32,000 bases of DNA from Paramicrosporidium saccamoebae KSL3 (lineage: Eukaryota; Fungi; Cryptomycota), in contig MTSL01000048.1 of assembly GCA_002794465.1 (NCBI GenBank), forward strand, positions 1-32,000, read 5' to 3'. Both the position numbers and the translations under genes were made by a program. Under the pieces are notes generated by a model. It was not told the origin of the DNA. It searched no databases and saw only the letters and a program-made list of their open reading frames with translations. The first letter of the stretch is position 1; the number at the start of each line of letters is the position of its first letter. Shown piece by piece: positions 6,007 through 29,588 of this stretch.

Positions 6007-7953
6007 ATGACAGACTCGCCACGTCAAGCCCAAATCCCCACAACCACAATTGCCTTCCTTGTCTGGTATTTTTATCCAGTACGCTCTCACCATCTAGCCA
6101 TGTTTGCCTAGAGCGCATGCAATCACCATTCTCGACGCGGTGTGGACATAGTTTCTGCCACGATTGCATTGTCAGGCAAATTGAGTATAATCCAGTGTGC
6201 CCTACATGCAGCTTACCCGTAACCCGGGAGGATGTCTTTCCAAACTTCACCCGTACCATTTTCAGAGGTTTTGCTGAGATTTAGTGGAGGCGGCTCTTAG
6301 GTCGCAGGAGAATCCCGAGCAGGACGAAGAGTCCTCTGATCTTTCTAGTCTTCCCCGTAGAGCTCAATTTCCTGCTTTCATGCTGTAGAATTACGACGAC
6401 GCATTGATATTTTGGTTGCACGCAAGAGACGCCTGGAGAAGGAGCAGAAGACTATGGAAACAAGGTCACTGTTAGAGTTTCTTGTTATTGCCCGCTCACA
6501 GAAACAGGAGGCGCTGGAAAAGGTCTCTGGGGAGTTGACAATGCTGGACAGGGATATAATCCGTGTTAAGCAGCGCATTGAACGAGAACTATCCGAATCG
6601 CAGCCCAGCCTTTCGCTAAACAACGAGGGTGAGCCTGAGGTGCCGGTGATCCAAGAGGATATCATCAGGGCGAGCAAACGAGTATTCTTAGATGCTTCGG
6701 GCGAAAAAGGTGCCGAGGTAGCAGAGCTGTCTGCTCCATTAGGCGTTGAGATAACAGAATTGTCTGCTCCATTAGGCGCCGATTCTACTGCATCGGCAGC
6801 CAGACCAACCGAGGTTGCAGAGTCACTTGCCCCTAACTCTAAAGCAATCATCCACGAGCATTTCGCAGATCTGCAAGCCTGCTATTTCGATGAGTCAGTC
6901 GAAGATCCCCTCGAATACTTTGGTAAGAAAATTTCCAAATTGACCAAGCTTACGAGGATAAGACAAGTTTCTGCGCTAAAATTGGGCGATGTTGCCGGAT
7001 CCTCCAACATTATCTCAAGCATTGAGTTTGATCGTCATGGACAGCTGTTTGCAACTGCCGGCGTGTCTAAAAAGATTCGATTTTACGAGTTTCGGGATAC
7101 AATGAATCAGACCATGGATCTCCATTGTCCAGTTCGTGAGATTCAGTGCAAGTCTAAAGTGAGTTGCATATCTTGGAATCCGTATATTCAACATCAACTT
7201 GCTTCGGCAGACTATGAAGGTCTGATTACCGTGTACGATTCAAACACTGGACTGGCTGTTTCCCATTTGGAGGAGCACGAAAAACGCAGCTGGAGCGTCG
7301 ATTTCAGCACCACAGACCCCACGAGACTTGCCTCTGGATCTGATGATTGCTATGTAAAGCTATGGTCGCTAAAGTCCCGCAAGTCGATTCTCACCATCGA
7401 CGGCAAGGCAAACATTTGCTCGGTTCGCTTTCATCCCGACCATGGACATTTGCTGGCATTTGGTTCTGCAGATCATAATGTCCATCTGTATGATTTGAGA
7501 TTTGCCGGTAAGCCTCTGGATATTTTGCGTGGACACAAGAAGGCAGTCTCATATGTTAGATTTGCAGACAATGCGAGCATTGTTTCCGCATCAACAGATT
7601 GCACATTGAGGCTTTGGTCTTTGCCGGGACAAGATGATACCATGCTTCCTGCAGATAGCTCCAAACTGACTCGCACATTTTCCGGACACTTGAACGAAAA
7701 GAACTTTGTGGGCCTTGGAGTGCAAGGAGATTTATTCGCCTGTGGATCAGAAAACAACTCTGTATATGTGTACCATCGTGACTTGTCTAAACCCATCGCC
7801 ACCTTCCGGTTTTCGTCTACGTGTCCATTGACTGAGAGCAGCATTGAGAACGAGGTCCAACAATTTGTAAGTAGCTTGTGTTGGAAGAAGGACTCTAACC
7901 TTATGGTCGCTGCAAATAGCCAAGGCAATATTCGCATCCTGGAGATCGTATAA
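6007..7953 (+). CDS. COP1: E3 ubiquitin ligase COP1/RFWD2 (RING, coiled coil, WD40)
   Basis: join(6007-6065,6098-6252,6285-6356,6389-7953), 616 aa, three 32-nt GT-AG introns. Splicing restores the RING CHVC...TRCGHSFCHDC...CPTC...FPNF. WD40 motifs SSIEFDR..FATAGVSKKI, AFGSADH, GHKKAVSYV, SASTD, GHLNEKNFVGL, ACGSENN, AANSQGNI match plant and animal COP1. Confidence 0.95.
6715..6780 (+). repeat. 33-bp in-frame tandem duplication in the COP1 linker (EVAELSAPLGV / EITELSAPLGA)
   Basis: Identical 18-mer TGTCTGCTCCATTAGGCG at 6728 and 6761. Confidence 0.9.
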
Positions 7954-7985
7954 TAAAACCGGCGTTGCTATGATTGGTCGGCTAA

Positions 7986-9623
7986 ATGACCGTTACCAAT
8001 ACTAAGAGGAAGGCTTCTTTGGCCAAGCCTGACGATGGTAGGGCCTGCGGTGAATGTTCTAACAAGTTATTAGGTCCCGAGACTGTTGGGATACGGTACA
8101 GTTGTGACTATTGCTACAAGGATATCTCCTCGATCGTACGCCTGCAGTGCGCAGAATGTGGACTTCCTGCACCCGCAGGGACTGTTCAAGAGGGAGCCAG
8201 CGCCACTGGCACCACTAGTGCTACTGGAGCTTTCTCTGCCCACTCCAACTTGGAGGAGGTAGACCTGTGCGTGGAATGCTTTTCTGCTGGAGTCGAGTTT
8301 GGCCAGCATAAAAGGAACCACGCCTACCGGATACTCCGGCCACTTGACTTTGCCGTCTACCGGCTCGACTGGCGCGCCGATGAAGAGATTCTGTTACTGG
8401 AGGCGGTAGAGTCAAACGGCATTGGGAATTGGAATGACGTAGCAGAGCAACTTGGTACGCGGACAGCGGAAGAGTGCAAATCCCATTACATGGAGGTGTA
8501 TATGAAAGTGGAGCCGAATGCGCCTGCTTCACTTGGTAAAGATGGAATAGAAAAGTCGAGAGAGGCTTTGAAGGACGTTAAGAGGAAGCGTCCTCGTTTT
8601 ATGACCAGCGAAGAAGCTATCGCTGCGGCGCCTACTCCGCAAAGCGTCCCTGCTAACCATGAACTCGCCGGCTTTATGCCTCTCCGCGGTGAATTCGAGA
8701 CAGAATTTGAGAATGATGCGGAAGTGGCGATCAAGGACCTAATATTCATGGAAGATGATACGCCTGCAGAGCGACAACTCAAGTTTACCATGTTGGACAT
8801 TTACTCCATGGTGCTGGATAGGAGGGCAGCGAGGAGAGAGTTTTGCTTTTCACATGGACTTGTGGATTTGAAAAAACATCAGTCAGTCGACAAGTCGCGA
8901 TCAAAGGACGAACGGGAAATTTACAACATGTTAAAGCCATTTTCAAGGTTTGTGTCGTCTGAAGATTTGCAAGGACTGCTGGATGGCCTAACGAGGGAGG
9001 AGGAGCTTCGGAGACAGATTTCGCATTTGCAAGAATTGCGTCGACATGGGATCAGGTCCTTTGACGAAGTATCACCGTTTGAATCAGAAAAGAAACATCT
9101 GGAGCTCTATCTGAAAGGTGGCAGTACAATACTAGGTGGACCGCAGGCAAAGACGAATGCTCCCATTGAGGAACCCTTTCCATTGCCTACTCCTGCAAAA
9201 TTCTCAAAGTCCATGACATCCACACAAGCCACGCCAGTGCCCACAACCATCTCCATCCCTCGACCCATGACTGCCGATTCAAGCAACGTCCCCACGCCCA
9301 GTGTCACGCCAGTCAATGGGAGCATTCCGCTGGCGCCTGCCAGTAGCGGTGGCCGAAAGGCATCCACACCGCTTAATATTTCCCATGCGGAAGGGGTGGA
9401 ACTTCTCAGCGAGAAAGAGCGACACTTGTGCTCCATCCTGCGGCTTTACCCGCGACTCTACCTCAGCATCAAGGATACACTGATCAGAGAATATCTCAAG
9501 CTGGGTGGACTGAAGAGGGCACAAGCAAGGGCAGCTGTAAAGATTGATGTCAACAAGACAAGCAAACTGTATGACTTTTTTGTGGCCGCTGGATGGATCA
9601 AGCCGCCTGCTTCTGGAGAATAA
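7986..9623 (+). CDS. ADA2: Transcriptional adapter 2 (SAGA subunit; ZZ, SANT, SWIRM)
   Basis: ZZ finger CDYC..CAEC..DLCVECF..H..H; SANT WRADEEILLLEA..GIGNWNDVA; GFMPLRGEFETEFENDAE; SWIRM LSEKERHLC..KIDVNKTSKLYDFF..GWI. Probable in-frame 36-nt intron at 8038-8073. Confidence 0.96.
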   Translation: MTVTNTKRKASLAKPDDGRACGECSNKLLGPETVGIRYSCDYCYKDISSIVRLQCAECGLPAPAGTVQEGASATGTTSATGAFSAHSNLEEVDLCVECFSAGVEFGQHKRNHAYRILRPLDFAVYRLDWRADEEILLLEAVESNGIGNWNDVAEQLGTRTAEECKSHYMEVYMKVEPNAPASLGKDGIEKSREALKDVKRKRPRFMTSEEAIAAAPTPQSVPANHELAGFMPLRGEFETEFENDAEVAIKDLIFMEDDTPAERQLKFTMLDIYSMVLDRRAARREFCFSHGLVDLKKHQSVDKSRSKDEREIYNMLKPFSRFVSSEDLQGLLDGLTREEELRRQISHLQELRRHGIRSFDEVSPFESEKKHLELYLKGGSTILGGPQAKTNAPIEEPFPLPTPAKFSKSMTSTQATPVPTTISIPRPMTADSSNVPTPSVTPVNGSIPLAPASSGGRKASTPLNISHAEGVELLSEKERHLCSILRLYPRLYLSIKDTLIREYLKLGGLKRAQARAAVKIDVNKTSKLYDFFVAAGWIKPPASGE

Positions 9624-9709
9624 TCAAGTATATAAATGTAATGTTCCTGAGAAGTTGGTTTATTTGACAAGAATGTTTTGGCTATTGAATGCTAGAAATT
9701 TCAGATAAC

Positions 9710-11119
9710 TCAGCAGCCGCCACGACGACATCTACAACGGCTCTTGCCACAACCACAACGACAGCGACGAGGTCGTCTTCTTACTCTGAGATTGCGACTC
9801 TGAGATGAGGAAGACCGAGAGACACTCCAACTCTGACTGCCACTCACACTTCTTCTCTTCCTCTTCTCTATCACCCTCTTCACATCAAACGCCACTGTGC
9901 TGCTCTCCGTGCACTGATTCACTGTTATATGGCGCACATGGTGACGATGCTTTCGCGGCTTCACCTTTATGAGCTTGCGATGACGACTACGCTTCTCCTT
10001 GGAGATCTTGCGGGATTTGCAGGCACGACGACGGGAACGAGAATAAGAGTCGCTGTAGCCACGCTTGTGGTGGTGCTTACCGGTGGCATGACGAGAAGAA
10101 TAACGGGAGGGATGACGTGCTTCTTTAACCGATGGCTTGTCGCTGTCCTTAATAACAGGCTTGTGGATATCAATGCGGGTTTCCTTACAGGTCGGCTTCC
10201 GAGACTTGTGGCATGCAGACTTTTTAGACAGAGTTGGCTTTCGGGTGTCACTTCGGGTCTTTTGGCGAGTGTCATGAGTCTTGTGGCGGATGTCATGAGT
10301 CTTTTGACGAGTTCCTTGACGAGTGTCTTGGCGAGTATCTTGACGAGCGTCTCTCCTTGTTGACACGGTATTCTTGGACTTTGGATGCTGACGACCATGG
10401 CCAGAATTACTCTTGCTGCAGCTCGAACTTGAAGATTTGGAACTGCTGGATGAGCTGCTTGAACTACTTGAGCTGCTTTGAAGCTTCAATGTCTTTCGAG
10501 CATGATGGACATGAGGCTTCCCCGGATGCTGAATCTGGGCGTGCACATGTGGCTTCGTAATCTTTGGCTTTCGCATCAGCTTCTTAGGAGCCTTTGGTTT
10601 GCTCACCTTGTAAGTCGTGACAGTTGTGCTTGAGCCCGAAGTGCTACAAGTGTTCGGAGTCGAAGAATCAGAACTGGGACATTTGTTGATTTGCTCGAGT
10701 AGCTTGTCGGCTGTCTTTGTAATCTTGTTAGTATCGACAGGCACCTTTTGCTTTGACTTTTGCTGCTTGCGCTTGTCAGTCTTGGAAGTCGGTTTCCTAA
10801 CTTGGGTATGCTTGCGTCGCTTACCATGGTCACTGCTACTAGAGTCTGAAGAACTGCTGCTCTCACTCCCACTGCTGCTACTGCTGCTTCTGGAAGAGAC
10901 GTGATGAGGCTTTTTCTTGTGCTGGCGATGCGTCTCTTTTTGTTGCTGCTTGCGTACCTTTTCTTTCTTGGCACGGCGATCCCCAATGACCTTTTGCACG
11001 GCAGCTACAGTCTCCGATCCCATTTCTTCGTGTCGTCTCAAAGATTTTGGACGTATCTTGCCCTCATTTAGCGTGGCCAAGACGATGGGCACCGTCAGCA
11101 AGCACAGAACCTTGTACAT
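9710..11119 (-). CDS. Secreted Ser/Lys/Arg/His-rich low-complexity orphan protein with Cys/Arg-rich C-terminus
   Basis: 469-aa ATG ORF. Signal-peptide-like MYKVLCLLTVPIVLA, poly-Ser runs, DTRQ-type repeats, ending RRRPRRCRCGCGKSRCRCRRGGC*. No family recognised. Confidence 0.78.
   Translation of the reverse strand: MYKVLCLLTVPIVLATLNEGKIRPKSLRRHEEMGSETVAAVQKVIGDRRAKKEKVRKQQQKETHRQHKKKPHHVSSRSSSSSSGSESSSSSDSSSSDHGKRRKHTQVRKPTSKTDKRKQQKSKQKVPVDTNKITKTADKLLEQINKCPSSDSSTPNTCSTSGSSTTVTTYKVSKPKAPKKLMRKPKITKPHVHAQIQHPGKPHVHHARKTLKLQSSSSSSSSSSSSSKSSSSSCSKSNSGHGRQHPKSKNTVSTRRDARQDTRQDTRQGTRQKTHDIRHKTHDTRQKTRSDTRKPTLSKKSACHKSRKPTCKETRIDIHKPVIKDSDKPSVKEARHPSRYSSRHATGKHHHKRGYSDSYSRSRRRACKSRKISKEKRSRHRKLIKVKPRKHRHHVRHITVNQCTESSTVAFDVKRVIEKRKRRSVSGSQSWSVSRSSSSQSRNLRVRRRPRRCRCGCGKSRCRCRRGGC
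10235..10355 (-). repeat. Coding minisatellite (12-bp DTRQ-type units, then KTHDxRx units)
   Basis: Translation DARQDTRQDTRQGTRQKTHDIRHKTHDTRQKTRSDTRK; repeated CTCGTCAAG / ACTCATGACA on the minus strand. Confidence 0.85.
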
Positions 11120-11374
11120 TGTTGGTCAACAGATTCCTGCAACGCCATTTTATACTCCGCTAGTAACTATTTTCTTTCGGAAGCATCACGATCTGCTTGG
11201 ATTCTACTTATTAACAAATGAACCAACTCTATCCATGATCACCAGCACGAATAAAATTTAATATCTTAATTACATAGAACTACATGCAATTATGCATGTT
11301 TACACTGAATGGCTTCAATGCATTTCAGCGCGATTTGGATACCCTGCGACCAGAGAAACGGCTTTTATTTATTC

Positions 11375-12442: not shown

Positions 12443-12624
12443 CACAACACACTTTGCTTCAGTTCCCCATTTATACGCATGGCCAAAAAAGGTAATTTGA
12501 TACACACGTGCTCCAACACTTGCTCATATCCAGATGAGTCATACTAAATGGCAAGAGATTATTGTAATGTTCTAAACATATCGAGATGACCAGTGCATTC
12601 CTCTTATTGGCCAAATCGAGCCCA

Positions 12625-12633
12625 ATGACTCAT
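12625..12633. promoter_or_regulatory. Perfect Gcn4/AP-1-type site ATGACTCAT upstream of arginase
   Basis: Exact 9-mer about 185 bp 5' of the arginase ATG. Function untested. Confidence 0.35.
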
Positions 12634-15856: not shown

Positions 15857-18800
15857 CTATGAGAGGAGGAAGCTGCCGCTGCCTTCTTCAATAGCCATGA
15901 GTAACTTTGCTCTCAAAATATCTTTAGAACTGTATCTTGGGAGTTTTAGATAATTCGCACAGGTCATTACGGTGGGCAAACTTTGGTCGGGATGGTCACA
16001 GGTGCGACAGACAACGGTGAGCGCGGGCCTCAGTTTGGCCCAGCCCCCACTTGGCAATTGCGGCCCACCAGTTAGAAATCGAATCAGACGACCTTTGTTC
16101 CCGGGATCCATCTCTGAGAATACCTCTGCGAGCCATTGTATCTGTTGGTTTTCCTTGGTATAGCCGTGATCGGCTTTGATTTCGCGTAGAATTGTTTGGG
16201 GAACCCAGTTTTGATTACGTTCGCCGTTGATTTGACGCAAGAATTCGTCGACAGTAAATATCCTGAAGGCTTCAAAGGGAAGGATCAAATTGAACGCCTC
16301 TACAAATGCTATCCCGGCCTCCTTTATACTGGTCTCCAAGATTAGACGCAAAATACAATCCAGATATTCGTCCAAGTTAGCCTGTGACAAGATCTTGCTT
16401 TCCCCATTGGGGCACAACTCGACTTGAGAGAAGGCAGGATGGACAAAGGCAAAGTCGGATAGAGCGCTGTTAGGTAGCTCGTAAAGTTTCTTCAGCGAGT
16501 TGGCCATGTCAGGATCAACCCGAGCAAGAGTTCGCAAAGAAAGCGGAGAATTTTTCCCCAAGAGGTATCCAACAAATACTTCATTTAGAGGCAGGTCCAG
16601 GATCCTATTGTCCAAAATGGCACGCGCGACTAAGAGCCCCAATTGAGAGAAACACTCTTTCCGAGCTATCGGCGACGGATAGAGTCCACATTTCCATTGT
16701 ACCTGCTCAGAAGTAGCATCACTCAGCCACATTGATGACGTTTGCACCAGCTCTGAAATCATGGAATAAAATTCCAAGGTTGGGCCCTATATGCATTATA
16801 AACAGAGAATGATATATACCAAGCCGACCCCAATGTCTCCATGAAATTGAAACTCTAGGATATACCGCTTATCAGTCGCATACCATGCCAATGCTCGTGT
16901 GGAATGGTCCTCAAATCTATCGCGATCGACCATAATCTTTACCCTTTTAATTCGAGCCAACTTGACTATAGAGTCACTTGGGTCGATGCCTGTCTCCGCT
17001 TTATATGCCGTCTGAATTCTCTAAGGATCAAAACTATTTCAGAAGGGTACATCAAGATATCGGGGTGTTCCGAAGCTTGTAGCCACCAAATATTCAACCT
17101 TTGTGTCAAAGTCAAACAAAAATGGAAATCTCTGCATTAGTCCGTGCCAAGCGGGGGGAATATAGCCAGCAGATACTAACAAGACTTGTTTTAACTGCCT
17201 TTTCAACTTTCGCAGCAGCCTCAAGTTGTTTAAATGACTCAAAAGATTAGGTTCCTGGCAACAAGTTTGCGAGGCCAAATCCAAGCTGTCAAAGCAGGCT
17301 CTCAAATCCTCAGACATTGGAGAGTAAGCTTCTTGGCTAGCCTTTTCAGCGCGGCCATGCTGGATCCTAATTTCGATGACATTATTGAAGAGAGGTCCAA
17401 ATGCTGAGGCGAAATTTTCAATCTTTTCCATTCCATGCAGCGTGTACGATAAGATGCACTTTTCTGCATCAAGCCCACTGATAATGTTGTCATTGATTTT
17501 CATAGAGCACTTGTATTCAGTCCAGTTCACAGATGACGTAGGTTGTTTTGCTGTCGACATGTCTACGGACATGTTTAACAACGCTTCTGTGGACATTGGC
17601 TGTTCAGAAATGGCCGAGAATATGTCTGCAGGAGAAGACATAGGATCCACAGTAATCAGTCGTGAAGAGATGGACTGCCGTCCCTCTATCAGAGCAGAGA
17701 ATGAAACCTTTACAGGACGGGCGACAAACATTAGCGGCTCAAGTGGATGGCCGGATCCTTTCGGAAGCTCCAAGAGAAGCATTGGGTATTCATGGTCATG
17801 GCGGCAAATATACTGCTGAACCTCGTCCATTGTCTTGAGTAACTCGGGTATGCTATCCGGATCGTTCTCCAGAGCAAGCTCTCGGAGGGATGCTATTATA
17901 CCCTTCCACTTGGACAATTCCTTACTCCCACCTTTAAATTTCGAGAACAATGCAGTTTCGACATCAAAAGCCAACTCGCTTATTGAATTTGCGCCGTAAG
18001 GACAGTCCAAAACCCGTGCCGCCTTGGTCAGTGCTTTCTTAAATAAAATATTCAGCTGGTCAACTCTCCATCCCGAGGGCTCACTGGTAAATTTATACAT
18101 GGTGTTATGGCTCTCTGGCACACTTTCAAACAATATAATCAACGATATCAAGGCCAAAACGCATGTGCTTGAGTTACGAGTCACAACAGTAGAGCAAAAG
18201 TTTTCAATACAACCTTCTAGTAAATTCACGTCATTGCTACCCTGCAAGCATACCCCAAGAGATGCAATCATACAAAGTGTCTTTGTCTCTCTTGAGCAAG
18301 GAAGATATAAATGAATGGCGTTTAAGATTTCATAAAAATCAAAGGTCAAGTCATCAGGTATAATATGCTTTTGTTCCTGAATACATAGTGACACTTGAAT
18401 CCGCGGAGACAAGATCAAGTCAAGTTTGCCGTTCTTTGGTATCACCTCGATAGGGAGACGACTGATGACAGAGTCATCGGGATATAACAAAGGAAGTATT
18501 GCTTCCAGAACCCCAATAATAGTTGGTTCACTCTGATCGCTAATGCTGGCAACTTGTGCATTCAATTGAGCCATGGAAAGTTCCATAATGTCACGAACAT
18601 TGCCACTTGGGCTTGCTAACAACAATTTTGCATAAAGCTTAAAGGAAACTAGCCAAATAGCAAGGTCTTTTAGTTCATGGCACAAGAGTAAGAAAATGCG
18701 GGCCATTTCACGATTTCCAGCAAGCAGATCAAAAATGGCCGGAGAATTTGCAATGCTTTGGTATATTTTCAAGATTTCTAGCAATTTGCCCGAGTCACCC

Positions 18801-19562
18801 GAGCTGGATTTTAAGAGAATTTCCAGATCTGGCAACACTGGAACAATGAAACCTTTATAGTCCTCAGGCTTGGCGGACTTTGCCAAAGATGTAGCGGCTT
18901 TGAGGACCGAAAGTTGTGTGGCCCTTGAGAAAAAGTCAAGATGAGACAGCAACGCAGGCAAAGAGCCTGACCTTAGGGACTTTCGTGGAAATCCTTGGGT
19001 GAAGCTTGCCAGACAATCAATTGCTGCTTCAGCTAGGTCGATAAACTCTATGTTCGTGAGGAACCCAACCAGGACATTTAAAATGCCATGCTCAATCATG
19101 TCTTTAGTTGCCAATCTGGAATGATCGGTAATAATCTTGATGCAACGACACGCAGCTATCAGGACCTCAGGGTTCAAACATCCGCTATCAAGGAATTTTG
19201 CAAGGATACTGCCCAGACCGCCAAAATCATTGTCCTGGTTAGGAGCCACCTCGGCAAACGTCTCTGTAAATGTCAGGAGAAAGTCGTTCGTATGATGAAG
19301 TTGCATTATCAGCTGCGTATCGTCGCCCAAGGCAATGCAGGCCTTGATGTTCTCAACTTGTGGTAGCAGGGTTCTTTGCTGCACTAAGATGAGATAAGCT
19401 CGGGGGCAGTACGGGTTTGAAGCATCGACAGACCGGCCGGGTTAAATCCTCCGGTACTAGAATTCTGCCACTCTTCCTCATCGGAATTCCCAGTACTCTG
19501 ATATCCAGAAGAGTGTCCGTCTACATGCTATAAATAATCATACGGAGCCTGATACCCTCCAT
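15857..19562 (-). CDS. UFD4: HECT E3 ubiquitin ligase, UFD4/TRIP12 family (ARM repeats plus HECT)
   Basis: Firm introns 17021-17050 (30 nt) and 16787-16819 (33 nt) join ARM region IEFIDLAEAAIDCL..LSHLDFFS to GVGL|GPTLEFY and HECT C-terminus LPTVMTCANYLKLPRYS..EGSGSFLLS*. The 5' extension to ATG 19562 via introns 19384-19412 (29 nt) and 19521-19555 (35 nt) is inferred and less certain. About 1190 aa. Confidence 0.9.
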
Positions 19563-19928: not shown

Positions 19929-21085
19929 ATGCCGACTCATATGCATCATTCATTAGAGAAGATTAAAAAAATTGACCTCCACACGCACATTATACCCGAA
20001 AGTTGGCCAGACTGGAACAAAGAATTTGGCCGTGGACGCTGGCTCACCATTCGACACGATGCCGATGGTGCAAAACTTATCAATGCCGATGGGACGCTCT
20101 TTCGGGCAGTGGAGAAGAATTGCTATTGTCCAGCAAAGAGATTAGAAGAATGTGACACTACTGACGTGTCTGTCCAGGTTCGATCGACTGTACTGGATTA
20201 ATAGCAATTAGGTCTTGTCTACTGTCCCTGGAATTGGATTCAACTACGGTGCACCGTCACAGGACGCACTCCGCGTTGCCCAATTCCTAAATGATCACAT
20301 TGGCCAAGTGATAAAGAGCGAACCTAAGCGCTTTGTCGGATTGGGTACTATCCCTCTCCAGGATTCTGACTTGGCAATTATCGAACTCAAGAGGTGTGTG
20401 ACCGAACTCGGCATGGCGGGTGTTCAAATAGGGAGCCATGTAGACGGTCGCAGCCTTGATGATTCCAGTCTGGAAAAGTTCTGGACCACCGTGGAGGAAT
20501 TGGACTGTGCTGTTTTTGTCCATCCTTGGGACATGTCCGACGCTGAAAGGGTCCAAAAGTACTGGTTTCCCTGGTACAAAATGTCCGATTTTTAATTTTA
20601 TAGGCTGCTTGGAATGCCACACGAAACCTCAATCGCACTGGGTAGTTTGCTTCTAGGCGGAGTGCTAGAACGACATCCCAAGTTGAGAATCTGCTTCGCC
20701 CACGGAGGAGGGTGTTTTCCTGCACTAATTGGGAGAATTAGCCACGGGTTCCACGCTAGACCCGATCTGTGCCAGACTGTAACTACCACTGACCCCAAGT
20801 AGCCCACATACAACTCTCACGTAATGCTGTAGAAATCTTTTAAAGCAAGTTTATGTGGATAGCCTGGTGCACGACCCAGAAATCTTGGAATTGCTAGTGA
20901 AAAAGTTTGGCGAGGATCGCATTATCCTTGGTAGCGACTATCCGTTTCCGCTTGGCGAAATTGATCGACCAGGCCAGCTCATAGAGACCACTCAGCTTGC
21001 CAAGGAGCCAGGCGACACTGAACGAATCCGCCAAAAGTTACTTTGGAAGAATGCCGTCACATTCTTAAAGCTGCCAGATTTTTAG
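19929..21085 (+). CDS. ACMSD: 2-amino-3-carboxymuconate-6-semialdehyde decarboxylase (amidohydrolase 2 family)
   Basis: join(19929-20177,20212-20573,20604-20798,20833-21085); introns of 34, 30 and 34 nt. Restores KIDLHTHI, VQ|VLSTVP, LGTIPLQ, GVQIGSHV, FVHPWDM, PW|LLGMPHET, FAHGGG, YVDSLVHD, GSDYPFPLGE. Confidence 0.95.
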
Positions 21086-21110
21086 TAATCAATTTTGATC
21101 TATCATAATT

Positions 21111-22783: not shown

Positions 22784-23753
22784 TCAATATACCCGGTCAA
22801 ACCCTCGTTCTGGGGGCTGCAGCCAATTTTGATTGTCATACTGACAATTTCCCTCAATGACATGGAATGTGTATGCATTTCGGGGATCCTCAGAGAGATT
22901 AGGGCCGCTTTGATGCACAACGGATCCATGAATCAGGACTAGCGTTCCCTTTGGAATCTCCAACTGAACGAATCGCTTATCTTCAAAGGTGTGTTGGGAT
23001 CCTTGAAAGCAAGTCTCAGTCCCAGCATCGTTCCTTACTAATCGGCTCGTTATTGGATACTCTGACATCAATGAACCAACCCGAGAATCTACCTTTGTGT
23101 GATCCGGGAATAAAGGATAGGGTCCCATTTTTAGCAGTGCAATCGTCCAAGGCAAACCAGAATCCTATCGCACTATTTGGCTCCGTGTACAGAAATGTAG
23201 AATCTTGATGGGGCACCACCTCGCCACCGATTCGGGGATTCTACACATGAATTTGCACCATCCAACTTGCCTTGAAAATGATCATGCTTTGCAGTATCAC
23301 TGGATGCTCAAATCCAAGCTGTCGAAATATCTCAATCAGGGAACTCGAGTGAGTAAAGTTGCGAAAAACTGAATCCTTTAAGTGCAATCCTACAAATTCC
23401 CATCATTATAGCCGACTCGTACCATGGCCAATCTTGTTGAGAGCTCGCTCTTTGGGAACCACAAGTTCACCTTTGTCATTCAATGCACCGGCTTCATAAA
23501 AGAACGAAATGTTGTCGCCACTGGCCAGAAAATATTGACTGTGCCGCTGTTGGCTGTTCTTTGTTACAAATCGAGTTACAGGATGGGACTCGGGCTTTAA
23601 TTGCTCGGCGAGCATCTGGGCACGATTTCTTAATTGTTGAATCTGCTCTTCCGAAAGAAAGTTTTTGATCAAAAGATAACCATCATTATTGAACTAGGTA
23701 TTTTAGTCAATTCCCGAAATTACTGCTTCCAAGTCCAAACCAGCAACGGGCAT
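22784..23753 (-). CDS. PHYHD1: Phytanoyl-CoA dioxygenase family Fe(II)/2OG enzyme (PHYHD1-like)
   Basis: complement join(22784-23061,23093-23240,23271-23389,23423-23693,23724-23753), 281 aa; introns 31, 30 (GC-AG), 33 and 30 nt. Motifs [27 protein letters not shown]|[42 protein letters not shown]. Confidence 0.94.
23241..23270 (-). other. 30-nt GC-AG spliceosomal intron (AAG|GCAAGT...GTGTAG|AAT)
   Basis: Removal deletes an in-frame TAG and restores the conserved IFK-xPxIGGEV motif; the donor matches the strong consensus typical of GC donors. Confidence 0.8.
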
Positions 23754-23805
23754 TATGTTGATGATGCTATGGATTTTTAATGCATTTGTTATTTGCGGAT
23801 TATCT

Positions 23806-24753
23806 TTATGGCTTGAGGCCGATGTGGAATGGGCATTTGGACGGGTCGCCTTTAACGTGGTCTTTGTCGGGAATTTTGTATCCCATCTTTTTAATTCGAT
23901 CTACATCGAAACCGCGCGACTTGAAAAATTGCTCCTGATCCCGCTTCTTTGAGTTACGAGATTTAGTAGGCTTTTTGCTCTGGGAACGAGGCTGTTTCTT
24001 GCGGCCGTGGTTGTTGTGGCGGCGGGGGTTTTTTACGTCCTGAGGCGTGCTCCAATAAACTCTGCCTTTTGGCTGGGATTTTCGAGCAGTTCGAGCAATT
24101 CGAGTAGGCCGTGCAGTTCGAGTGGTTCGAGTAGACTGAGTGGACTGAGTAGACAAAGTCCTCGGGCCTCTACTCTTGTGCTTATTCTTACGATCACGGC
24201 CACGCACATGTCTACGCCCATGTCCATGTCTACGTCCATGCCTATGTCCACGCCTATGTCCATGCTTGCGCTTACTCTTACGGCCACAGGAATCTGAAGA
24301 GGAGGCTGAAGAGGAGGAATAACTATAGCTCTGCATCTCTCGTAATAGATCAGCATTCTCTTTCTTTGCCAAAAATGGACATTGTTTCGCATCGCCACCA
24401 AATCCATGATGATTTATAGCGTGGGCGGCTGCCCGAGATGCTATTTTCACTGTACCTTGAGGTTTCTTGACACTTGCGCCGCTGCCAATTTCGTCATCAT
24501 TTGCAGATGAAACTTTCTTATCGTACCCAAATGGACATTTTCCCCCCGCTGGTTTGGGCTCCTTTACATCGCTATCACCATACCCAAACGGACATTTGGG
24601 CTTTTCGGGAGTTTTGGCTGGCTCCTTTGAACCTACAGCCGGAGTCGACTGTTCACGGGAATTTCGGTATGCGTGAATGGTACCTGCGAGCACCAGCAGG
24701 AATGCAAGACCGCTGATTGCAACAGTCCAGAAGCGACGACCAAGAGATTTCAT
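23806..24753 (-). CDS. Secreted or signal-anchored orphan protein with four K/Q-C-P-F motifs and a His/Arg-rich segment
   Basis: ATG at 24753; hydrophobic N-terminus FWTVAISGLAFLLVLAGTIHA. KCPFG x2, QCPFL, KCPFH; SSSSASSSDSC followed by KHGHRRGHRHGRRHGHGRRH. 315 aa. Confidence 0.8.
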   Translation of the reverse strand: MKSLGRRFWTVAISGLAFLLVLAGTIHAYRNSREQSTPAVGSKEPAKTPEKPKCPFGYGDSDVKEPKPAGGKCPFGYDKKVSSANDDEIGSGASVKKPQGTVKIASRAAAHAINHHGFGGDAKQCPFLAKKENADLLREMQSYSYSSSSASSSDSCGRKSKRKHGHRRGHRHGRRHGHGRRHVRGRDRKNKHKSRGPRTLSTQSTQSTRTTRTARPTRIARTARKSQPKGRVYWSTPQDVKNPRRHNNHGRKKQPRSQSKKPTKSRNSKKRDQEQFFKSRGFDVDRIKKMGYKIPDKDHVKGDPSKCPFHIGLKP

Positions 24754-24876
24754 TCTGTGTGGCGTAATTCTCGCCTCGTTACCTACTTTCAATTTCCGCC
24801 GTCTGGGCCAATCAAAACTTGCAAAAAGAATCGAGTTGTAGTGGAAAATGCGCCGGGGCTAGCGCACATCTTCCTG
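24754..24876. promoter_or_regulatory. Probable bidirectional promoter (123 bp) between the CPF-motif gene and BRL1/BRR6
   Basis: Head-to-head ATGs at 24753 (-) and 24877 (+). Inferred from geometry. Confidence 0.45.
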
Positions 24877-25930
24877 ATGTTAGCGTCAGAGCGAGGGAAA
24901 GAATCTCCAATGGATCTTGACTCGCCACCGTCAGTGTGGTGCAATTCGCCCGTTCCAACAACCTCTCCGGACAAGCCGGTTACTCCAAGTACATGATAAT
25001 CATGTTTTCCAATCAGTAGGGGCTGTTTTTGGAGCGCCTACCTCCTCGCCCGGGAGCAGCGGTGGGCCGCATTCCCCCACAAAGTCAATGCCCAGAGTTA
25101 GACGGCTTGGATTGTTTGGAGGCTCGCCTTCCAGGATTAGGAGCAGTCCACTGGCACGACGAAGCAGAGTAGAAGGCGACTCGCCTCTCTCAGAGACAAA
25201 CTCGACGGTAATTCGCTGCAGTGTTATAGCTTTTAGAAGAAGAAACGGGCATTAGTCGAAAGAGAAGACAACAACCGACACTTGTATCTGCCACTCGTCA
25301 TTATGGGGTATCAAGTCGTAGTGTCACGCTGACTATTCGTAGATACCTGCAAGTTGCCTTCAATGTGATTTTGATATCTGGAGTGCTCTATTTTTTGATG
25401 CAATTCTTCCTAACTGTACGACGTGACGTCCAAATTAAGGTGGATGAGCAGCTTTCGACCATCCTCGCCGAAATATCCCAGTGTTCGAAACAATATGTGG
25501 AGAACCGGTGTAGTCCAGACTTGAGGGTTCCAGCCATGGAAAAGGCCTGCATCGTGTGGGAAAGTTGCATGAAACGAGATCCATCTGTTATCGGACGGGC
25601 GAAGCTATCGGCTGAGACCTTTGCAGAAATAATCAACGGCTTCATCGAACCCATCTCCTACAAAACAATGGTACCAGCCCAGTGGATCAGTGGTTGCTGA
25701 CATTGTAGATATTCATCTTGGCGGCACTGTTTGGGACAATATTCCTATCAAACTATGCCTTTTCAATGGCGAGGAATAGGGTGAGCTCGGGATACGCTCC
25801 AATGTTGCGGGATCAACAAACCGTTTTTGCGTCTGGACTTTACACCCCAGTACATACAGTATCCTTATCTGCGTTGTCTCTAATATAATAGACTCCAGGG
25901 AAACAAAAGGCCCTAATGTCTCTTCAATAA
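24877..25930 (+). CDS. BRL1: Nuclear envelope / NPC biogenesis protein, Brl1/Brr6 family
   Basis: Introns 24989-25016 (or -25019), 25208-25236, 25308-25342, 25671-25708 and probably 25859-25891. Gives ESPMD N-terminus, G|YLQVAFNV TM, four-Cys loop QCSKQYVENRC..VPAMEKAC..WESCMKRDP, AETFAEIINGFIEPISYKTM|IFIL..SNYAF. The last exon is less certain. Confidence 0.88.
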
Positions 25931-26212
25931 ACTGTAACATATCATTGACGTAGATAATTATCTGTACAGCCGAGCGTGTTGATGTATTCCCTAATGAGCA
26001 ATCGCTACGGATCAAGTCACTATTATTTGCACTGTGAGAGGGAGTCCTTAGTACCAACTTGTGATTGGGTTAATAAGACGCTTTCACTACAACTTTATTT
26101 ACTATTCAGTAAAGAATTTACTAATCCCCTAGTCCCAATTCACTAATCCCAACCCACTCACTAGTCTCAAACCACCAGGCCCATCCACTGGGCCACCAGG
26201 GCAATAGGTTGC

Positions 26213-27982
26213 ATGAGTGAACAAGGTAGAGTCTCTTAATGATTATAGTCTCATTTACCAGGCTTCATCAGCAAGATTAAAAATTCCAAGCGCTTCAGTC
26301 TAAAACGGCTCGTTGGCGGCAACAAGGATGAAATAGAAGGCCCTGCTTCACTGCCCGCCAGCAGCAAAGAGTCACTCGCAGCACGGGCCCTACATAGCAA
26401 TAGCGGAAGTGAGCGCGAGCGTAGTCCAGGGAGAATTGAAGACTATCCCGAGGCGCCAACTTGTGACGAGGACGACGAGGACTACCATGACACTGACGAC
26501 AGCGACCAAGAGGACGACGAAGATTACAAAAAGGGAGGATACCATCCGGTGACTGTGGGAGATGTGTTCCACGAACGCTACACAATTATCCGAAAAATGG
26601 GATGGGGACACTTTTCCACAGTGTGGCTGTCGTATGACTCTACTAACAATCAGTACGTTGCCTTGAAGATTGTCAAAAGTGCAGAGCACTACACCGAGGC
26701 TGCTGAAGATGAAATTCTGCTTCTGGAAAAGGTGAGCGGTTGCATTAGCAAACTCCATCTTGTGCCTGGTGAAGAGTCGGTGGTTCGGCTCCTGGACCAT
26801 TTCCGCCATAGAGGCCCCCACGGAGCTCATGTCTGCATGGTATTTGAGGTGTTGGGAGAGAATCTGCTTAGAGTAATCAGGAGATTTGAACACCGTGGCC
26901 TACCTCTGCATGTTGTCAAAGTGCTTGCAAAGCAAATGCTGCAAGGATTGGATTTGTTGCACCGAGAATGTGGTATTATCCATACCGATTTGAAGCCTGA
27001 GAATATCCTAGTCTGTCTCGAACAGGATGAGATTCGACGAATGGCCACTATTGCCCTGGAGCGGGCATTAAGGGAGGGGGAGACTACTAGTATTGGGAGT
27101 GTCGATGTTGATAGTGAGCCACGTTCCCGCAGAGCCCGTGGTTCCTTCTCGGAGCATTTGCAGAGGATAGCAGCATCCAGTGAGGATTGCACCAAGTCAG
27201 TTGAGAGGATGCGTCAACTCTACCAAATGGTGACCTACTCGCAGCAATTCGATCTGGCAGAAAGTATGGGAGGCATTAACATTTCGCAGAGGTCAGCGGT
27301 GCAAATGACAGAGGGTGCAAGTCTATTCATGAAGGGGACTGAGCGCGGAACATCGCGCGACTGGCAACAAGATCGAAATGGATCTAGAAGCACATCAAGG
27401 ATGAGACAACTTGCTCCGGATAATATCCGAGTCAAGATTGCAGATCTCGGGAATGCCTGTTGGGTTGATAAACACTTTACAAATGACATTCAAACACGCC
27501 AATATCGGGCGCCTGAAGTGATCCTTGGAATGAATTATGACACCTCCTGTGACATTTGGAGCACCGCTTGTGTGGTGTTTGAGCTGGCTACTGGCGATTT
27601 TTTGTTTGCTCCCCATTCTGGCAAAAGATATAACAAGAATGAAGATCACGTGGCCCAAATGATTGAGCTACTTGGTAAGATGCCGCGATCCTTTGCACTC
27701 GGTGGCAAGTACTCTTATGAAATATTCAACCGACGTGGCGAGCTTCGTCACATTAGAGATCTCGAGTATTGGAAACTCGAGGATGTGCTTACTGAAAAAT
27801 ACCGGATGCACCCCAATGACGCTATGGAGTTGGCGTCTTTCCTCTCTCCCATGCTCGAGTTTATACCACGGCGGAGGGCGTCTGCGCAGGATTGTCTTAC
27901 CCATCCGTGGCTCAAGCCAGAGCAGTCCATGGACAACGACTATACCATAAGACGGCCGAGCGATGCCACAATCGGAGCATAA
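26213..27982 (+). CDS. SKY1: SR-protein kinase (SRPK/Sky1/Dsk1)
   Basis: join(26213-26225,26262-27982), 577 aa, one 36-nt intron. EDYKKGGYHPV, KMGWGHFSTVWL, VALKIVKS, HTDLKPEN, spacer insert, KIADLGNACW, IQTRQYRAPEV. Confidence 0.96.
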
Positions 27983-28012
27983 GGAAAATAAAGCAATTTC
28001 TTTGTTTATGTG

Positions 28013-29588
28013 ATGAGTGTCCTAGAGAATCTTGGCAAGAAGATTAGCAGCACACTGGAGAGTGCACAGAAGGACCTCCGCCAGTCAGTGGCAAAGTCTC
28101 TGTCTGTAGCCGCCACGAGTATTGCCACTCCGCCGCCCGTTACGAGTGGCAGCAAATCCAAATTATTTAGCACCATCCTGGACCGCTCCAAACGCATCCG
28201 TGACCATATTGTCGATCGCCGCAATCCTACCAGTACCCGAAATTTCCAGTGCTGACTGTAGTGGGGGCTGAAGGACCGGGAATAACAACGACCGGCGTGT
28301 CGAGAGACGATGTGCAGGAGAAACTGGCGACATTTGCCAGATTGGAAAAGGAGTTTTGCGACCTGATTGAGGCGTATGAGATTCTGTTGGTGGAAAGGAT
28401 TCATTTGGAGGAAATTGTGGCGGGAAGTAGTCAGCTCGAGTCCCTCGATGACTTGGAACTTGTTGGACAATACTACAAGGCCATCCAGGACACGACGCAG
28501 GTAGAACCATAGACACGACGTTTATTGAGTAGATGTCGAAGCAGGAAATTGCACGTCTAACTCAAAAGGTCGAAGAGTTGGAAAGTCTCCCAGCGACAAA
28601 GGCCGATTCAATCGCTATTGAATATGCGCGACGGAACGGCGACGATGAGCAATTAGAGACATCATCTAATGTCAGCACCCAATCGGTTGCCGAGAAATTA
28701 AGTGAGGCTCGGGACAGCATTGCCGCATTGACACAGCAGCTCCGTGACAAGGACAGTCGGATTCTGGAACTCGAGTCAGCGCAAAAGACTTTGATCAAAG
28801 ACAAATCTTCCCTTACGAGCCGAGATTTGGAACGAGAGAGCGTGGTGACGTCATTAGAATCGCAAAAGATGGCCTTGGAGACACGGGTAAATTATATGCA
28901 AAAACAACTGCAGGATTTTGAAGGGAAGCGGGCCAAATTTAAGGAAATTTCAAGCACCAGTCAGGGAGAGGTACAACAGGCCAAAGAAGAGCTGTCCAAA
29001 TGCAAGCAGCGACTGGCTCTGACGGAATCGGATCTTTGTGCGACAAGAAAGGTGTTGGAGGCGTGTCAGACAGAACTAGACTTGGTCCGAGAGGAAGCTG
29101 ACAACTCTCTACGAAATCTCAATAGCGAGCAATTCCGGCTAGATTCGGCATTAACGTTAGCAGAAACGTTATTAGATGAGGAGCGTCTCAAATGCAAGGA
29201 TTTGCTCAAACAACTGGGGACAGCCAATGAACAGCTTGCTCAGCTTCAAAAAATGCTTTCGTTGAAGGAATCGGAAATTGTCCGCCAATCAAGAGCCATG
29301 TCCATTGATTCTGTACGGAGTCCCAGTATATTCAGCACGGAGGACACGGGTGAGACGGTCCGAAGGAGACCATCCACTACTGCGGAGCAATCAATCAAAG
29401 CCCTCAAGGCAGAATGTGAACGATTAGCCATTGAGAATACGAGGATCAAGGCCTCTTCACAGATTGAATACATTCGGAACATTATGCTGCGGTTCCTCCA
29501 GCTGCCCGATCAACGGAAAACTCTGCTCCCAGTGCTCAGCAATCTCTTTCGCTTCACCGACACGGAATTGGCATCAATAAAGAAGTAA
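28013..29588 (+). CDS. GRIP-domain coiled-coil golgin (Imh1/golgin-97/245-like)
   Basis: join(28013-28232,28262-28500,28533-29588), 504 aa; introns of 29 nt (CTGAC branch motif) and 32 nt. Long heptad coiled coil ending in the GRIP motif EYIRNIMLRFL..RKTLLPVLSNLFRFTDTE. Confidence 0.88.

What the first reader, a model, noticed from the sequence alone, without database searches (positions are those of the whole stretch)
6066..28532. Micro-intron regime: about 23 introns, all 28-38 nt
Seen: COP1 32/32/32; ADA2 36; UFD4 35/29/30/33; ACMSD 34/30/34; PHYHD1 30/33/30/31; BRL1 28 or 31/29/35/38/33; SRPK 36; GRIP 29/32. Most are pinned by restoring conserved motifs; the ADA2, two 5' UFD4 and last BRL1 introns are inferred. 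About 20 end in TAG, and branch motifs are weak or variable (CTAAC, CTGAC, CTCAC, TTAAT). Established: very short introns occur in ciliates, nucleomorphs and some microsporidia. Inference: intron-rich but length-defined splicing in a fungal-type genome; ab initio annotation would truncate these genes (e.g. lose the COP1 RING).
Basis: partly seen in the sequence, partly recalled or inferred. Interest (0 to 1): 0.7.

Follow-up and report, generated by a model that had tools for sequence, protein, structure and literature searches.

The report
Real 29–38-base introns in Paramicrosporidium
This stretch of the genome of Paramicrosporidium saccamoebae, an amoeba parasite related to fungi and microsporidia, has at least 25 genuine introns of only 29–38 bases, which the published gene annotation mostly misses, so many of its protein models here are truncated or fused.

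Summary
The window is bases 1–32000 of contig MTSL01000048.1 of Paramicrosporidium saccamoebae (Rozellomycota).

Each has GT–AG ends (one has GC–AG), and removing it restores an open reading frame.
- Twenty-one have independent support. Unbiased spliced alignments of unrelated homologues, with introns of 18–300 nt allowed, pick exactly these coordinates. Or related species have an intron at the same codon and phase. Or the relative's reading frame runs unbroken across the junction.
- This includes the "inferred" ADA2 and last BRL1 introns.
- Only the two 5' UFD4 introns remain untested.

Across the 25 introns the length is 29–38 nt (mean 32.4). The 5' site is reduced to GTA, the 3' site is TAG in 23 of 25, and a degenerate TNAY motif sits about 9 nt before the 3' end. 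At all 14 positions shared with relatives, the P. saccamoebae intron is the shortest.

The deposited annotation truncates COP1 (no RING) and ACMSD, fuses PHYHD1 with its neighbour, fuses BRL1, SRPK, GRIP and RabGAP, and omits DPM2.

No paper I could search describes this. It is a new member of a known kind (micro-intron genomes). No RNA evidence was available.

The parts
5072..5101 (-). DPM2 intron, 30 nt, phase 0 (GTACCT...GATAG).
   Evidence: Removing it gives a 90-aa DPM2-like reading frame. Relative R1 has an 81-nt intron at the same codon and phase.
5787..5822 (+). Intron of a small unnamed gene, 36 nt, phase 0 (GTATTG...TAATAG).
   Evidence: The continuous 108-aa reading frame of relative R1, aligned to the window, picks this intron. 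The intron carries in-frame stops.
6066..6097 (+). COP1 intron 1, 32 nt, phase 2. Splicing creates the first cysteine of the RING.
   Evidence: The Pfam RING match (positions 2-40 of 40) starts at the junction codon. The same codon and phase carry an intron in R1 (50 nt) and in R4 (38 nt).
6253..6284 (+). COP1 intron 2, 32 nt, phase 1.
   Evidence: The same position carries an intron in R1 (49 nt) and in R4 (45 nt). The Nematostella homologue picks the same coordinates.
6357..6388 (+). COP1 intron 3, 32 nt, phase 1.
   Evidence: The same position carries an intron in R4 (37 nt). The R1 reading frame is continuous there. Two distant homologues pick 6357-6388.
8038..8073 (+). ADA2 intron, 36 nt, phase 1 (GTAGGG..CTAAC..TTAG). 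It is in frame and has no stop codon.
   Evidence: Relative R4 has an obligatory 40-nt phase-1 intron at the same codon. The R4 spliced protein, aligned to the window, picks exactly 8038-8073.
19521..19555 (-). UFD4 intron a, 35 nt, phase 1. Inferred only.
   Evidence: Support is reading-frame continuity from the ATG at 19562, which is also the 5' limit of the deposited model. No comparative test was possible.
19384..19412 (-). UFD4 intron b, 29 nt, phase 1. Inferred only.
   Evidence: It joins an upstream exon that holds an ATG to the main reading frame, which has no early ATG. No comparative test was possible.
17021..17050 (-). UFD4 intron c, 30 nt, phase 0, with in-frame TGA and TAG.
   Evidence: The R1 orthologue reads continuously across this junction.
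16787..16819 (-). UFD4 intron d, 33 nt, phase 0.
   Evidence: R1 has a 45-nt intron at the same codon and phase.
20178..20211 (+). ACMSD intron 1, 34 nt, phase 0 (GTT donor).
   Evidence: Five of five independent homologues pick it. The alignment across the junction has no gap.
20574..20603 (+). ACMSD intron 2, 30 nt, phase 2.
   Evidence: Five of five homologues pick it. It restores the near-invariant WLxGMPxET block.
20799..20832 (+). ACMSD intron 3, 34 nt, phase 2.
   Evidence: Five of five homologues pick it. R2 has a 63-nt intron at the same codon and phase.
23694..23723 (-). PHYHD1 intron 1, 30 nt, phase 0.
   Evidence: It carries an in-frame TAA. One of five homologues reaches it and picks it. 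The Pfam PhyH match (positions 1-213 of 213) starts just after it.
23390..23422 (-). PHYHD1 intron 2, 33 nt, phase 1.
   Evidence: Five of five homologues pick it.
23241..23270 (-). PHYHD1 intron 3, 30 nt, phase 0, with a GC-AG donor (aag|GCAAGT).
   Evidence: Five of five homologues pick it despite a penalty on GC donors.
23062..23092 (-). PHYHD1 intron 4, 31 nt, phase 1, ending in CAG.
   Evidence: Four of five homologues pick it.
24989..25019 (+). BRL1 intron 1, 31 nt, phase 1. The TAG acceptor is used, not the 28-nt CAG variant.
   Evidence: R2 has a 57-nt phase-1 intron in the same Arg codon, followed by VVFGAP.
25208..25236 (+). BRL1 intron 2, 29 nt, phase 0.
   Evidence: R2 has a 53-nt intron at the matching position.
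25308..25342 (+). BRL1 intron 3, 35 nt, phase 2.
   Evidence: R2 reads RHLMLPLVIMGYLQVAF continuously. This matches the two-intron model and rejects a single 22-nt alternative.
25671..25708 (+). BRL1 intron 4, 38 nt, phase 0.
   Evidence: It lies inside the Pfam Brr6_like_C_C match, which is uninterrupted after splicing. R2 has a 48-nt intron at the same position.
25859..25891 (+). BRL1 intron 5, 33 nt, phase 0, in front of the 12-codon last exon TPGKQKALMSLQ.
   Evidence: The same position carries an intron in R2 (107 nt), R3 (51 nt) and R5 (50 nt), and the last micro-exon is conserved.
26226..26261 (+). SRPK intron, 36 nt, phase 1, after a 13-nt first exon (ATG at 26213). It ends in CAG.
   Evidence: The main reading frame has no ATG before the kinase glycine loop. 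R3 has a 54-nt intron at the same codon, reading MSDK|G FINKIKN.
28233..28261 (+). GRIP-domain protein intron 1, 29 nt, phase 1.
   Evidence: R3 has a 37-nt intron at the same codon and phase.
28501..28532 (+). GRIP-domain protein intron 2, 32 nt, phase 0.
   Evidence: The same position carries an intron in R3 (41 nt), R2 (77 nt) and R5 (52 nt).

Best explanation
These are ordinary spliceosomal (U2-type GT-AG) introns of Paramicrosporidium saccamoebae that have shrunk to a near-minimal, almost uniform length of 29-38 nt (mean 32.4, sd 2.5).

**Shown**
- The segments interrupt conserved genes.
- They start with GT (one with GC) and end with AG, and removing them restores reading frames and homology.
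- The P. saccamoebae copy is the shortest at every shared position.

**Inferred**
- The introns are recognised across the intron (intron definition), from GUA at the 5' end, a degenerate U-N-A-Y branch region whose A lies about 9 nt (6-12) upstream of the 3' end, a U-rich and G-poor interior, and UAG at the 3' end.
- The short, fixed spacing itself acts as part of the signal, because positions +4 to +6 carry no consensus.
- Retained introns would mostly be caught by premature stop codons. Of the 25 introns, 21 carry an in-frame stop and 3 shift the frame. Only the ADA2 intron would be read through.

**Consequence**
Gene finders trained on normal fungal introns skip or overshoot these introns, which explains the truncated and fused deposited models.
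For: **Identity of the window.**

**Reading frames and domains.**
- All spliced coding sequences are open.
- After splicing, Pfam matches run uninterrupted across junctions: Amidohydro_2 positions 1-289 of 289, PhyH 1-213 of 213, Brr6_like_C_C 2-132 of 133, RING 2-40 of 40.

**Unbiased spliced alignment of independent homologues** reproduces the exact coordinates.

**Protein alignment.** Twelve ACMSD sequences align without gaps at all three junctions, whereas the deposited model lacks conserved blocks.

**Shared intron positions in relatives R1-R5.**. P. saccamoebae is shorter at 14 of 14 positions (sign test p = 1.2e-4).

**Signal statistics**.
- GTA in 23 of 25 introns and TAG in 23 of 25.
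- A at position -9 in 15 of 25 (p = 2.6e-4).
- TNAY in 21 of 25 introns against 2 of 13 exonic look-alikes (p = 6.6e-5).
- More T than G inside real introns compared with look-alikes (p = 1.5e-4).
Against: - No RNA evidence was available. No transcript-derived protein identical to any spliced model exists in the 15-billion-protein collection.
- The two 5' UFD4 introns are untested.
- The branch motif was defined after looking at the data.
- Enrichment of in-frame stops over shuffled introns is not significant: 21 of 24, p = 0.055; for lengths that are multiples of three, 10 of 10, p = 0.16.
- Introns whose length is a multiple of three are not depleted (11 of 25).
- Avoidance of GTA...TAG look-alikes in exons is not significant: 14 observed against 21 ± 4 expected, p = 0.058.
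- So the quality-control and length-measuring parts of the explanation are not demonstrated.
- The sample is one 32-kb window, and a 120-bp intron is reported elsewhere in this genome.
Confidence: 0.9

Rival explanations
1. The short segments are not removed from RNA. They would be assembly or sequencing insertions, or the genes would be decaying pseudogenes of a reduced parasite.
For: The genome is a metagenome-derived draft from an amoeba co-culture.
Against: - Every segment has GT/GC-AG ends, and 23 of 25 end in TAG.
- Removing a segment restores the frame and conserved residues exactly.
- Fourteen segments sit at the same codon and phase as introns of different length and sequence in independently assembled relatives.
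- Random insertions or decay would not do any of this.
Confidence: 0.02
2. The introns are real, but this window is not typical. The genome as a whole would have a normal fungal-like intron length distribution, and the micro-introns would be one short class among several.
For: A 120-bp intron is reported in the P. saccamoebae S23 gene (PMC6349667). Only 32 kb and about 19 genes were examined.
Against: - All 25 introns found in ten unrelated genes fall in 29-38 nt, although the aligner allowed 18-300 nt.
- No longer intron was needed for any gene in the window.
- The closest relative, R4, also has only 37-45 nt introns in the two genes examined.
Confidence: 0.12
3. Some of the in-frame introns whose length is a multiple of three, above all the stop-free ADA2 segment, are not spliced or are only optionally spliced. 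They would then encode short peptide insertions, so the true intron count is a little lower.
For: - The ADA2 segment keeps the frame and encodes 12 residues, including a C-x-x-C.
- R1 has coding sequence of similar length there.
- Its T-minus-G composition resembles the exonic look-alikes.
Against: - R4 has an obligatory intron, 40 nt and frame-breaking, at exactly this codon.
- The flanking residues KPDD..G|PE.VGIRY are conserved, while the 12 residues have no counterpart in R4.
- The segment has GTA, CTAAC and TAG.
Confidence: 0.2

Closest known systems
Ciliate micro-introns (Paramecium about 25 nt; the 33-35 nt class of Oxytricha and Stylonychia)
   Same: Both have a narrow, near-minimal length distribution. 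Both have many introns per genome, a likely intron-definition mode of recognition, and frequent in-frame stops in introns, so that retention would trigger premature termination (PMC5014332). From memory only, Paramecium introns are also described as GTA...TAG.
   Different: The lineage is different (Holomycota, not Alveolata). In ciliates, introns whose length is a multiple of three are depleted and enriched for stops. Here 11 of 25 have such a length, and stop enrichment is not significant in this small sample.
Short introns of Microsporidia (for example Encephalitozoon cuniculi) and the roughly 30-nt putative introns noted in Rozella allomycis S23
   Same: This is the closest phylogenetic neighbourhood, and the size class is similar. 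Whelan et al. 2018 describe two roughly 30-nt introns in Rozella S23 that lack conserved 5' splice-site and branch-point motifs (PMC6349667). That matches what is seen here.
   Different: Microsporidia have very few introns or none (0.01 per kb against 2.5 per kb in Rozella; PMC8476143). The same paper implies that the short E. cuniculi introns keep conserved 5' and branch motifs. Here introns are frequent (about 1.1 per kb of coding sequence, in 10 of about 19 genes), lie in ordinary housekeeping genes, and have only GTA as a 5' signal.
Typical fungal introns (about 50-100 nt, GTRAGT ... CTRAY ... YAG)
   Same: The same GT-AG chemistry is implied. The single GC donor has the full AAG|GCAAGT consensus, as GC-AG introns usually do. 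The related genomes R1 and R2 still show GTAAG donors and CTAAC-like motifs in 45-107 nt introns at the same positions.
   Different: The introns here are half to a third as long. There is no G at +5 (4 of 25) and no consensus at +4 to +6, and the branch motif is reduced to TNAY.

Membership tests
Spliceosomal U2-type GT-AG introns | GT (rarely GC) at the 5' end and AG at the 3' end. | tested here: met
   24 of 25 start with GT, 1 of 25 with GC, and 25 of 25 end with AG.
Spliceosomal U2-type GT-AG introns | Removal restores the reading frame and collinearity with homologous proteins. | tested here: met
Spliceosomal U2-type GT-AG introns | Position and phase are conserved in related species while the intron sequence and length diverge. 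| tested here: met
   Fourteen positions are shared with R1-R5, where the introns are 37-107 nt.
Spliceosomal U2-type GT-AG introns | A branch-point adenosine in a recognisable motif upstream of the 3' splice site. | tested here: inconclusive
   There is a degenerate TNAY motif with its A at -6 to -12 in 21 of 25 introns, and A at -9 in 15 of 25. The motif was chosen after seeing the data, and no branch site was mapped.
Spliceosomal U2-type GT-AG introns | Absence from mature mRNA. | not testable with these tools
   No reads or transcripts of this species were reachable. The exact spliced proteins are not in the protein collection.
Micro-intron genomes (ciliate or nucleomorph type of regime) | A single narrow intron length peak below about 40 nt. 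| tested here: met
   All 25 introns are 29-38 nt (sd 2.5) within this window, although 18-300 nt was allowed. A genome-wide test was not possible.
Micro-intron genomes (ciliate or nucleomorph type of regime) | Depletion of introns whose length is a multiple of three, and enrichment of in-frame stops in those that remain. | tested here: not met
   Eleven of 25 have such a length. Ten of those 11 carry in-frame stops, but this does not exceed shuffled controls (p = 0.16, computed on the 10 known before the stop-free ADA2 intron was added). The sample is small, and detection favours introns that contain stops.
Microsporidian-type intron set | Very few introns, with strongly conserved 5' splice-site and branch motifs. 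| tested here: not met
   About 1.1 introns per kb of coding sequence, spread over 10 genes, with a 5' consensus of only GTA. For comparison.

The most novel reading that the evidence does not exclude
Paramicrosporidium saccamoebae would be an intron-rich genome whose spliceosome works genome-wide on introns of about 32 nt, with a 5' signal collapsed to GUA. It would be the extreme end of a shrinking series visible in its uncultured relatives (107 down to 37 nt, then 32). Introns also turn over actively: five introns seen only in P. saccamoebae, and four seen only in relatives, within a handful of genes. That would make it a living intermediate between normal fungal splicing and the near loss of introns in microsporidia. 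It would also mean that the published proteome of about 3750 genes, used in many studies of microsporidian origins, is systematically truncated and fused, so some reported gene losses could be annotation artefacts.
Probability: 0.6. Interest if true: 0.7.

Novelty: new member of a known kind. Interest (0 to 1): 0.62.

Why it matters
**Annotation.** P. saccamoebae is a key reference genome for the origin of Microsporidia.
- In this 32-kb sample, several of roughly 19 genes are wrongly modelled in the deposited annotation. COP1 has no RING, ACMSD lacks 64 residues, and UFD4 is shortened.
- PHYHD1 is fused with its neighbour, one 3146-aa chimera covers at least four genes, and DPM2 is missing.
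- None of the six corrected proteins I looked up exists in a 15-billion-protein collection.
- If this is typical, gene-content comparisons and phylogenomic matrices built on this proteome need a re-annotation with a gene finder that accepts introns of about 30 nt.

**Biology.** The genome offers a fungal-lineage system, with a graded series of relatives, for two questions. How does a spliceosome recognise introns with almost no sequence signal at a near-minimal length? How did introns shrink before being lost in microsporidia?

Tried and rejected
1. **Six-frame scans for GT...AG pairs that join open frames**. They gave no length signal above control dinucleotide pairs. Many exons are too short for such windows, so the test was underpowered and I dropped it.
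2. **A home-made codon-usage gene finder with a free intron length**. It chained all genes into one mega-gene, much as the deposited annotation did in part. Dropped.
3. **A single 22-nt intron in BRL1 instead of the 29-nt and 35-nt pair.** Rejected, because R2 reads RHLMLPLVIMGYLQVAF continuously.
4. **The 28-nt (CAG) variant of BRL1 intron 1.** Rejected in favour of 31 nt, because R2 has Arg followed by VVFGAP.
5. **ADA2.** I first judged this intron unsupported, from the R1 alignment. I reversed that after the closer relative R4 showed an obligatory intron at the same codon.
6. **Horizontal transfer of ACMSD.** This was suggested by a high-scoring bacterial hit. Rejected: that protein has a duplicated domain and is only 51-53% identical, like the fungal homologues.
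7. **Enrichment of in-frame stops, and avoidance of GTA...TAG look-alikes in exons.** Neither was significant.
8. **Rfam scan of the window.** No RNA genes.
9. **Distant COP1 homologues.** They could not place intron 1 and gave variable ends for intron 2. Close relatives were needed.
Full report
**Where the window comes from.** The COP1 reading frame of the window is carried by NCBI assembly GCA_002794465.1, contig MTSL01000048.1, and the window is positions 1-32000 of that contig. Accession MTSL00000000 is the genome of Paramicrosporidium saccamoebae (Quandt et al. 2017, eLife, PMC5701793). The deposited ACMSD protein is named as from that species. NCBI taxonomy places it in Fungi, phylum Rozellomycota. 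It is an intranuclear parasite of amoebae. The main text of the genome paper never uses the words intron or splicing. Its annotation was made with MAKER, using Augustus trained on Rhizopus oryzae.

**Checking the observation.** I read every junction in three frames and built spliced models. All spliced coding sequences are open from ATG to stop.
- After splicing, Pfam matches run uninterrupted across junctions: Amidohydro_2 positions 1-289 of 289, PhyH 1-213 of 213, Brr6_like_C_C 2-132 of 133.
- The COP1 RING match (positions 2-40 of 40) begins at the cysteine codon that intron 1 splits.

**An unbiased test.** I wrote a protein-to-DNA spliced aligner that allows any GT/GC-AG intron of 18-300 nt.
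- ACMSD homologues from Basidiobolus, Gonapodya, Dictyostelium and a mammal, plus one from an unidentified Logan contig, each pick exactly 20178-20211, 20574-20603 and 20799-20832.
- Five PHYHD1 homologues from the representative library pick 23390-23422 and 23241-23270 in 5 of 5, 23062-23092 in 4 of 5 and 23694-23723 in 1 of 5.
- The 23241-23270 intron has a GC donor in the context aag|GCAAGT and was picked despite a penalty on GC donors.
- In a 12-sequence ACMSD alignment my model has no gap at any junction. The deposited 288-aa model lacks VSVQ, a 47-residue block that holds near-invariant residues, and KNLLKQVYVDS.

- R1 = L001 (SRR24693327)
- R2 = L006 and L007 (SRR27341044 and SRR35124147)
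- R3 = L008 (SRR28640813)
- R4 = L009 (DRR438482), the closest, 72% identical over the COP1 N-terminus
- R5 = L010 (SRR28640813)

L001, L006/L007 and L008 keep the gene order of the window. The shorter contigs L009 and L010 show the same local neighbours (COP1-ADA2; SRPK-GRIP). Fourteen P. saccamoebae introns have a counterpart at the same codon and phase in at least one relative:

| Intron | P. saccamoebae (nt) | Relatives (nt) |
|---|---|---|
| COP1 1 | 32 | R1 50, R4 38 |
| COP1 2 | 32 | R1 49, R4 45 |
| COP1 3 | 32 | R4 37 |
| ADA2 | 36 | R4 40 |
| UFD4 d | 33 | R1 45 |
| DPM2 | 30 | R1 81 |
| ACMSD 3 | 34 | R2 63 |
| BRL1 1 | 31 | R2 57 |
| BRL1 2 | 29 | R2 53 |
| BRL1 4 | 38 | R2 48 |
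| BRL1 5 | 33 | R2 107, R3 51, R5 50 |
| GRIP 1 | 29 | R3 37 |
| GRIP 2 | 32 | R3 41, R2 77, R5 52 |
| SRPK | 36 | R3 54 |

The P. saccamoebae copy is the shortest at all 14 positions (sign test p = 1.2e-4).

For five further introns the relative's reading frame runs continuously through the junction and matches the spliced P. saccamoebae protein. These are UFD4 c, ACMSD 1 and 2, BRL1 3, and the intron at 5787-5822. Relatives in turn have introns that P. saccamoebae lacks: R2 ACMSD at aa 47 and aa 175, R3 and R5 SRPK at aa 96, and R4 COP1 at aa 136. Intron positions therefore turn over within this group. The direction (gain or loss) cannot be told from pairwise comparisons.

**Points where the comparison changed the picture.**
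- *BRL1 introns 2 and 3.* A single 22-nt intron would also keep the frame open.
- *BRL1 intron 1.* It is 31 nt, not 28.
- *Last BRL1 intron.* It is not needed to keep a frame open, but it precedes a 12-codon exon (TPGKQKALMSLQ) that is conserved behind an intron in R2, R3 and R5.
- *ADA2.* This segment is in frame and has no stop, and R1 has coding sequence of similar length there, so I first judged it unsupported. The closer relative R4, however, has an obligatory 40-nt phase-1 intron at exactly this codon. Its spliced protein, aligned to the window, selects 8038-8073.
- *Still untested.* The two 5' UFD4 introns rest only on reading-frame logic and on the ATG at 19562, which is also the 5' limit of the deposited model.

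DPM2, on the minus strand, has a 30-nt intron at 5072-5101. A small unnamed gene has a 36-nt intron at 5787-5822. I found no gene in the window that needs a longer intron. A 120-bp intron is, however, reported in the S23 gene of this genome (PMC6349667).

**Anatomy of the 25 introns**.
- Length is 29-38 nt, mean 32.4, sd 2.5.
- Phases 0, 1 and 2 number 11, 10 and 4.
- The 5' end is GTA in 23 (one GTT, one GCA), with no consensus at +4 to +6. G at +5 occurs in only 4 of 25.
- The 3' end is TAG in 23 and CAG in 2.
- Base composition is T 35% and G 22%, with G+C 40% against 48% for the window.
- A at position -9 occurs in 15 of 25 (p = 2.6e-4).
- A TNAY motif with its A at -6 to -12 occurs in 21 of 25 introns, against 2 of 13 GTA...TAG look-alikes of 28-38 nt inside mature coding sequence (p = 6.6e-5). 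I chose this motif after seeing the data.
- Those 13 look-alikes show that GTA, TAG and length alone do not fully specify an intron.

**Tests that did not reach significance.**
- In-frame stops occur in 21 of the 24 introns tested, against 18 expected from shuffling (p = 0.055). All 10 introns with a length divisible by three known at that point carry one (p = 0.16).
- The ADA2 intron is a stop-free exception with a length divisible by three.
- Such lengths are not depleted (11 of 25).
- Exonic look-alikes number 14 against 21 ± 4 after synonymous shuffling (p = 0.058). A control length class was even lower.

**Consequences for the deposited annotation**.
- COP1 is modelled as 499 aa from 6454, without the RING.
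- ACMSD is 288 aa instead of 352.
- UFD4 is 1107 aa instead of 1192.
- PHYHD1 is fused with the upstream basic protein into a 545-aa model.
- BRL1, SRPK, GRIP, RabGAP and further genes are fused into one 3146-aa model.
- DPM2 is not annotated, and a CoaE model runs over it on the other strand.
- None of the six corrected proteins I looked up is present as an exact sequence among about 15 billion public proteins.

**How it most likely works.** These are canonical spliceosomal introns recognised across the intron. Three cues are visible: a minimal GUA donor, a degenerate branch region about 9 nt upstream of a UAG acceptor, and a U-rich, G-poor interior. The tight length range suggests that spacing is constrained close to the physical minimum of this spliceosome and may itself help pair the two ends. 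Retention would give a premature stop or a frameshift in 24 of 25 cases. The shared positions and the shrinkage relative to relatives are shown. Recognition by length and surveillance by premature stops are inferences, and my tests of the latter were not significant.

**What is known.**
- Ultra-short introns are established in ciliates (PMC5014332), and, from my own knowledge, in nucleomorphs and microsporidia.
- Whelan et al. 2018 noted two roughly 30-nt putative introns without conserved motifs in the S23 gene of Rozella.
- A 2026 study states that GTPase genes of rozellids and short-branch microsporidia typically contain introns.
- Six literature searches and six papers checked gave no description of intron length or splice signals in P. 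saccamoebae.

I therefore rate this as a new member of a known kind. It is real, apparently unreported in the library I could search, and of practical weight for a much-used reference proteome. It is not a new category.

Noticed in passing
DPM2 (ATG at 5191, minus strand) is absent from the deposited annotation, where a CoaE model (3979-5021, plus strand) runs across it.
   Followed up: yes
window 23241-23270 (-): This is the only non-GT donor. It is a GC-AG intron with the full aag|GCAAGT consensus, whereas the GT introns have no consensus beyond GTA.
   Followed up: partly
window 25088-32000+ (+), 22784-24753 (-), 19941-21085 (+): The deposited gene models are chimeric or truncated. One 3146-aa model fuses Brr6-like, Pkinase, GRIP, RabGAP-TBC, ABC2 and DEAD domains. 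A 545-aa model fuses PHYHD1 with its upstream neighbour. The ACMSD model is 288 aa.
   Followed up: yes
window 9710-11119 (-) and 23806-24792 (-): There are two long reading frames (469 and 328 aa) of very low complexity. They are rich in Ser, Lys, Arg and His, with repeats such as TRQDTRQ and HGHRRGHRHGRRHG, and neither showed a convincing counterpart in the relatives' loci. The second is swallowed into the deposited PHYHD1 model. Whether they are real genes is unknown.
   Followed up: no
L006 2063-2124 and 2512-2575; L008 738-780; L010 859-902; L009 637-677: Relatives carry introns at positions where P. saccamoebae has none (ACMSD aa 47 and aa 175, SRPK aa 96, COP1 aa 136). P. saccamoebae in turn has five introns at positions where a relative reads through. 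Intron positions therefore turn over quickly in this group.
   Followed up: partly
L001 versus window 11375-12505: Gene order is conserved between P. saccamoebae and R1 from UCH to UFD4. There are three differences: the arginase gene is inverted, R1 has a Ku gene that the window lacks, and the low-complexity frame at 9710-11119 has no R1 counterpart. In R2, UFD4 is absent between SPX-EXS and ACMSD, and an ABC2 gene replaces PHYHD1.
   Followed up: no
L005 (ENA ERZ10645735 scaffold_7864): The second-best ACMSD hit is a 493-aa bacterial protein in a bacterial gene neighbourhood. Its high score comes from a duplicated domain at 51-53% identity, so it is not a sign of gene transfer.
   Followed up: yes
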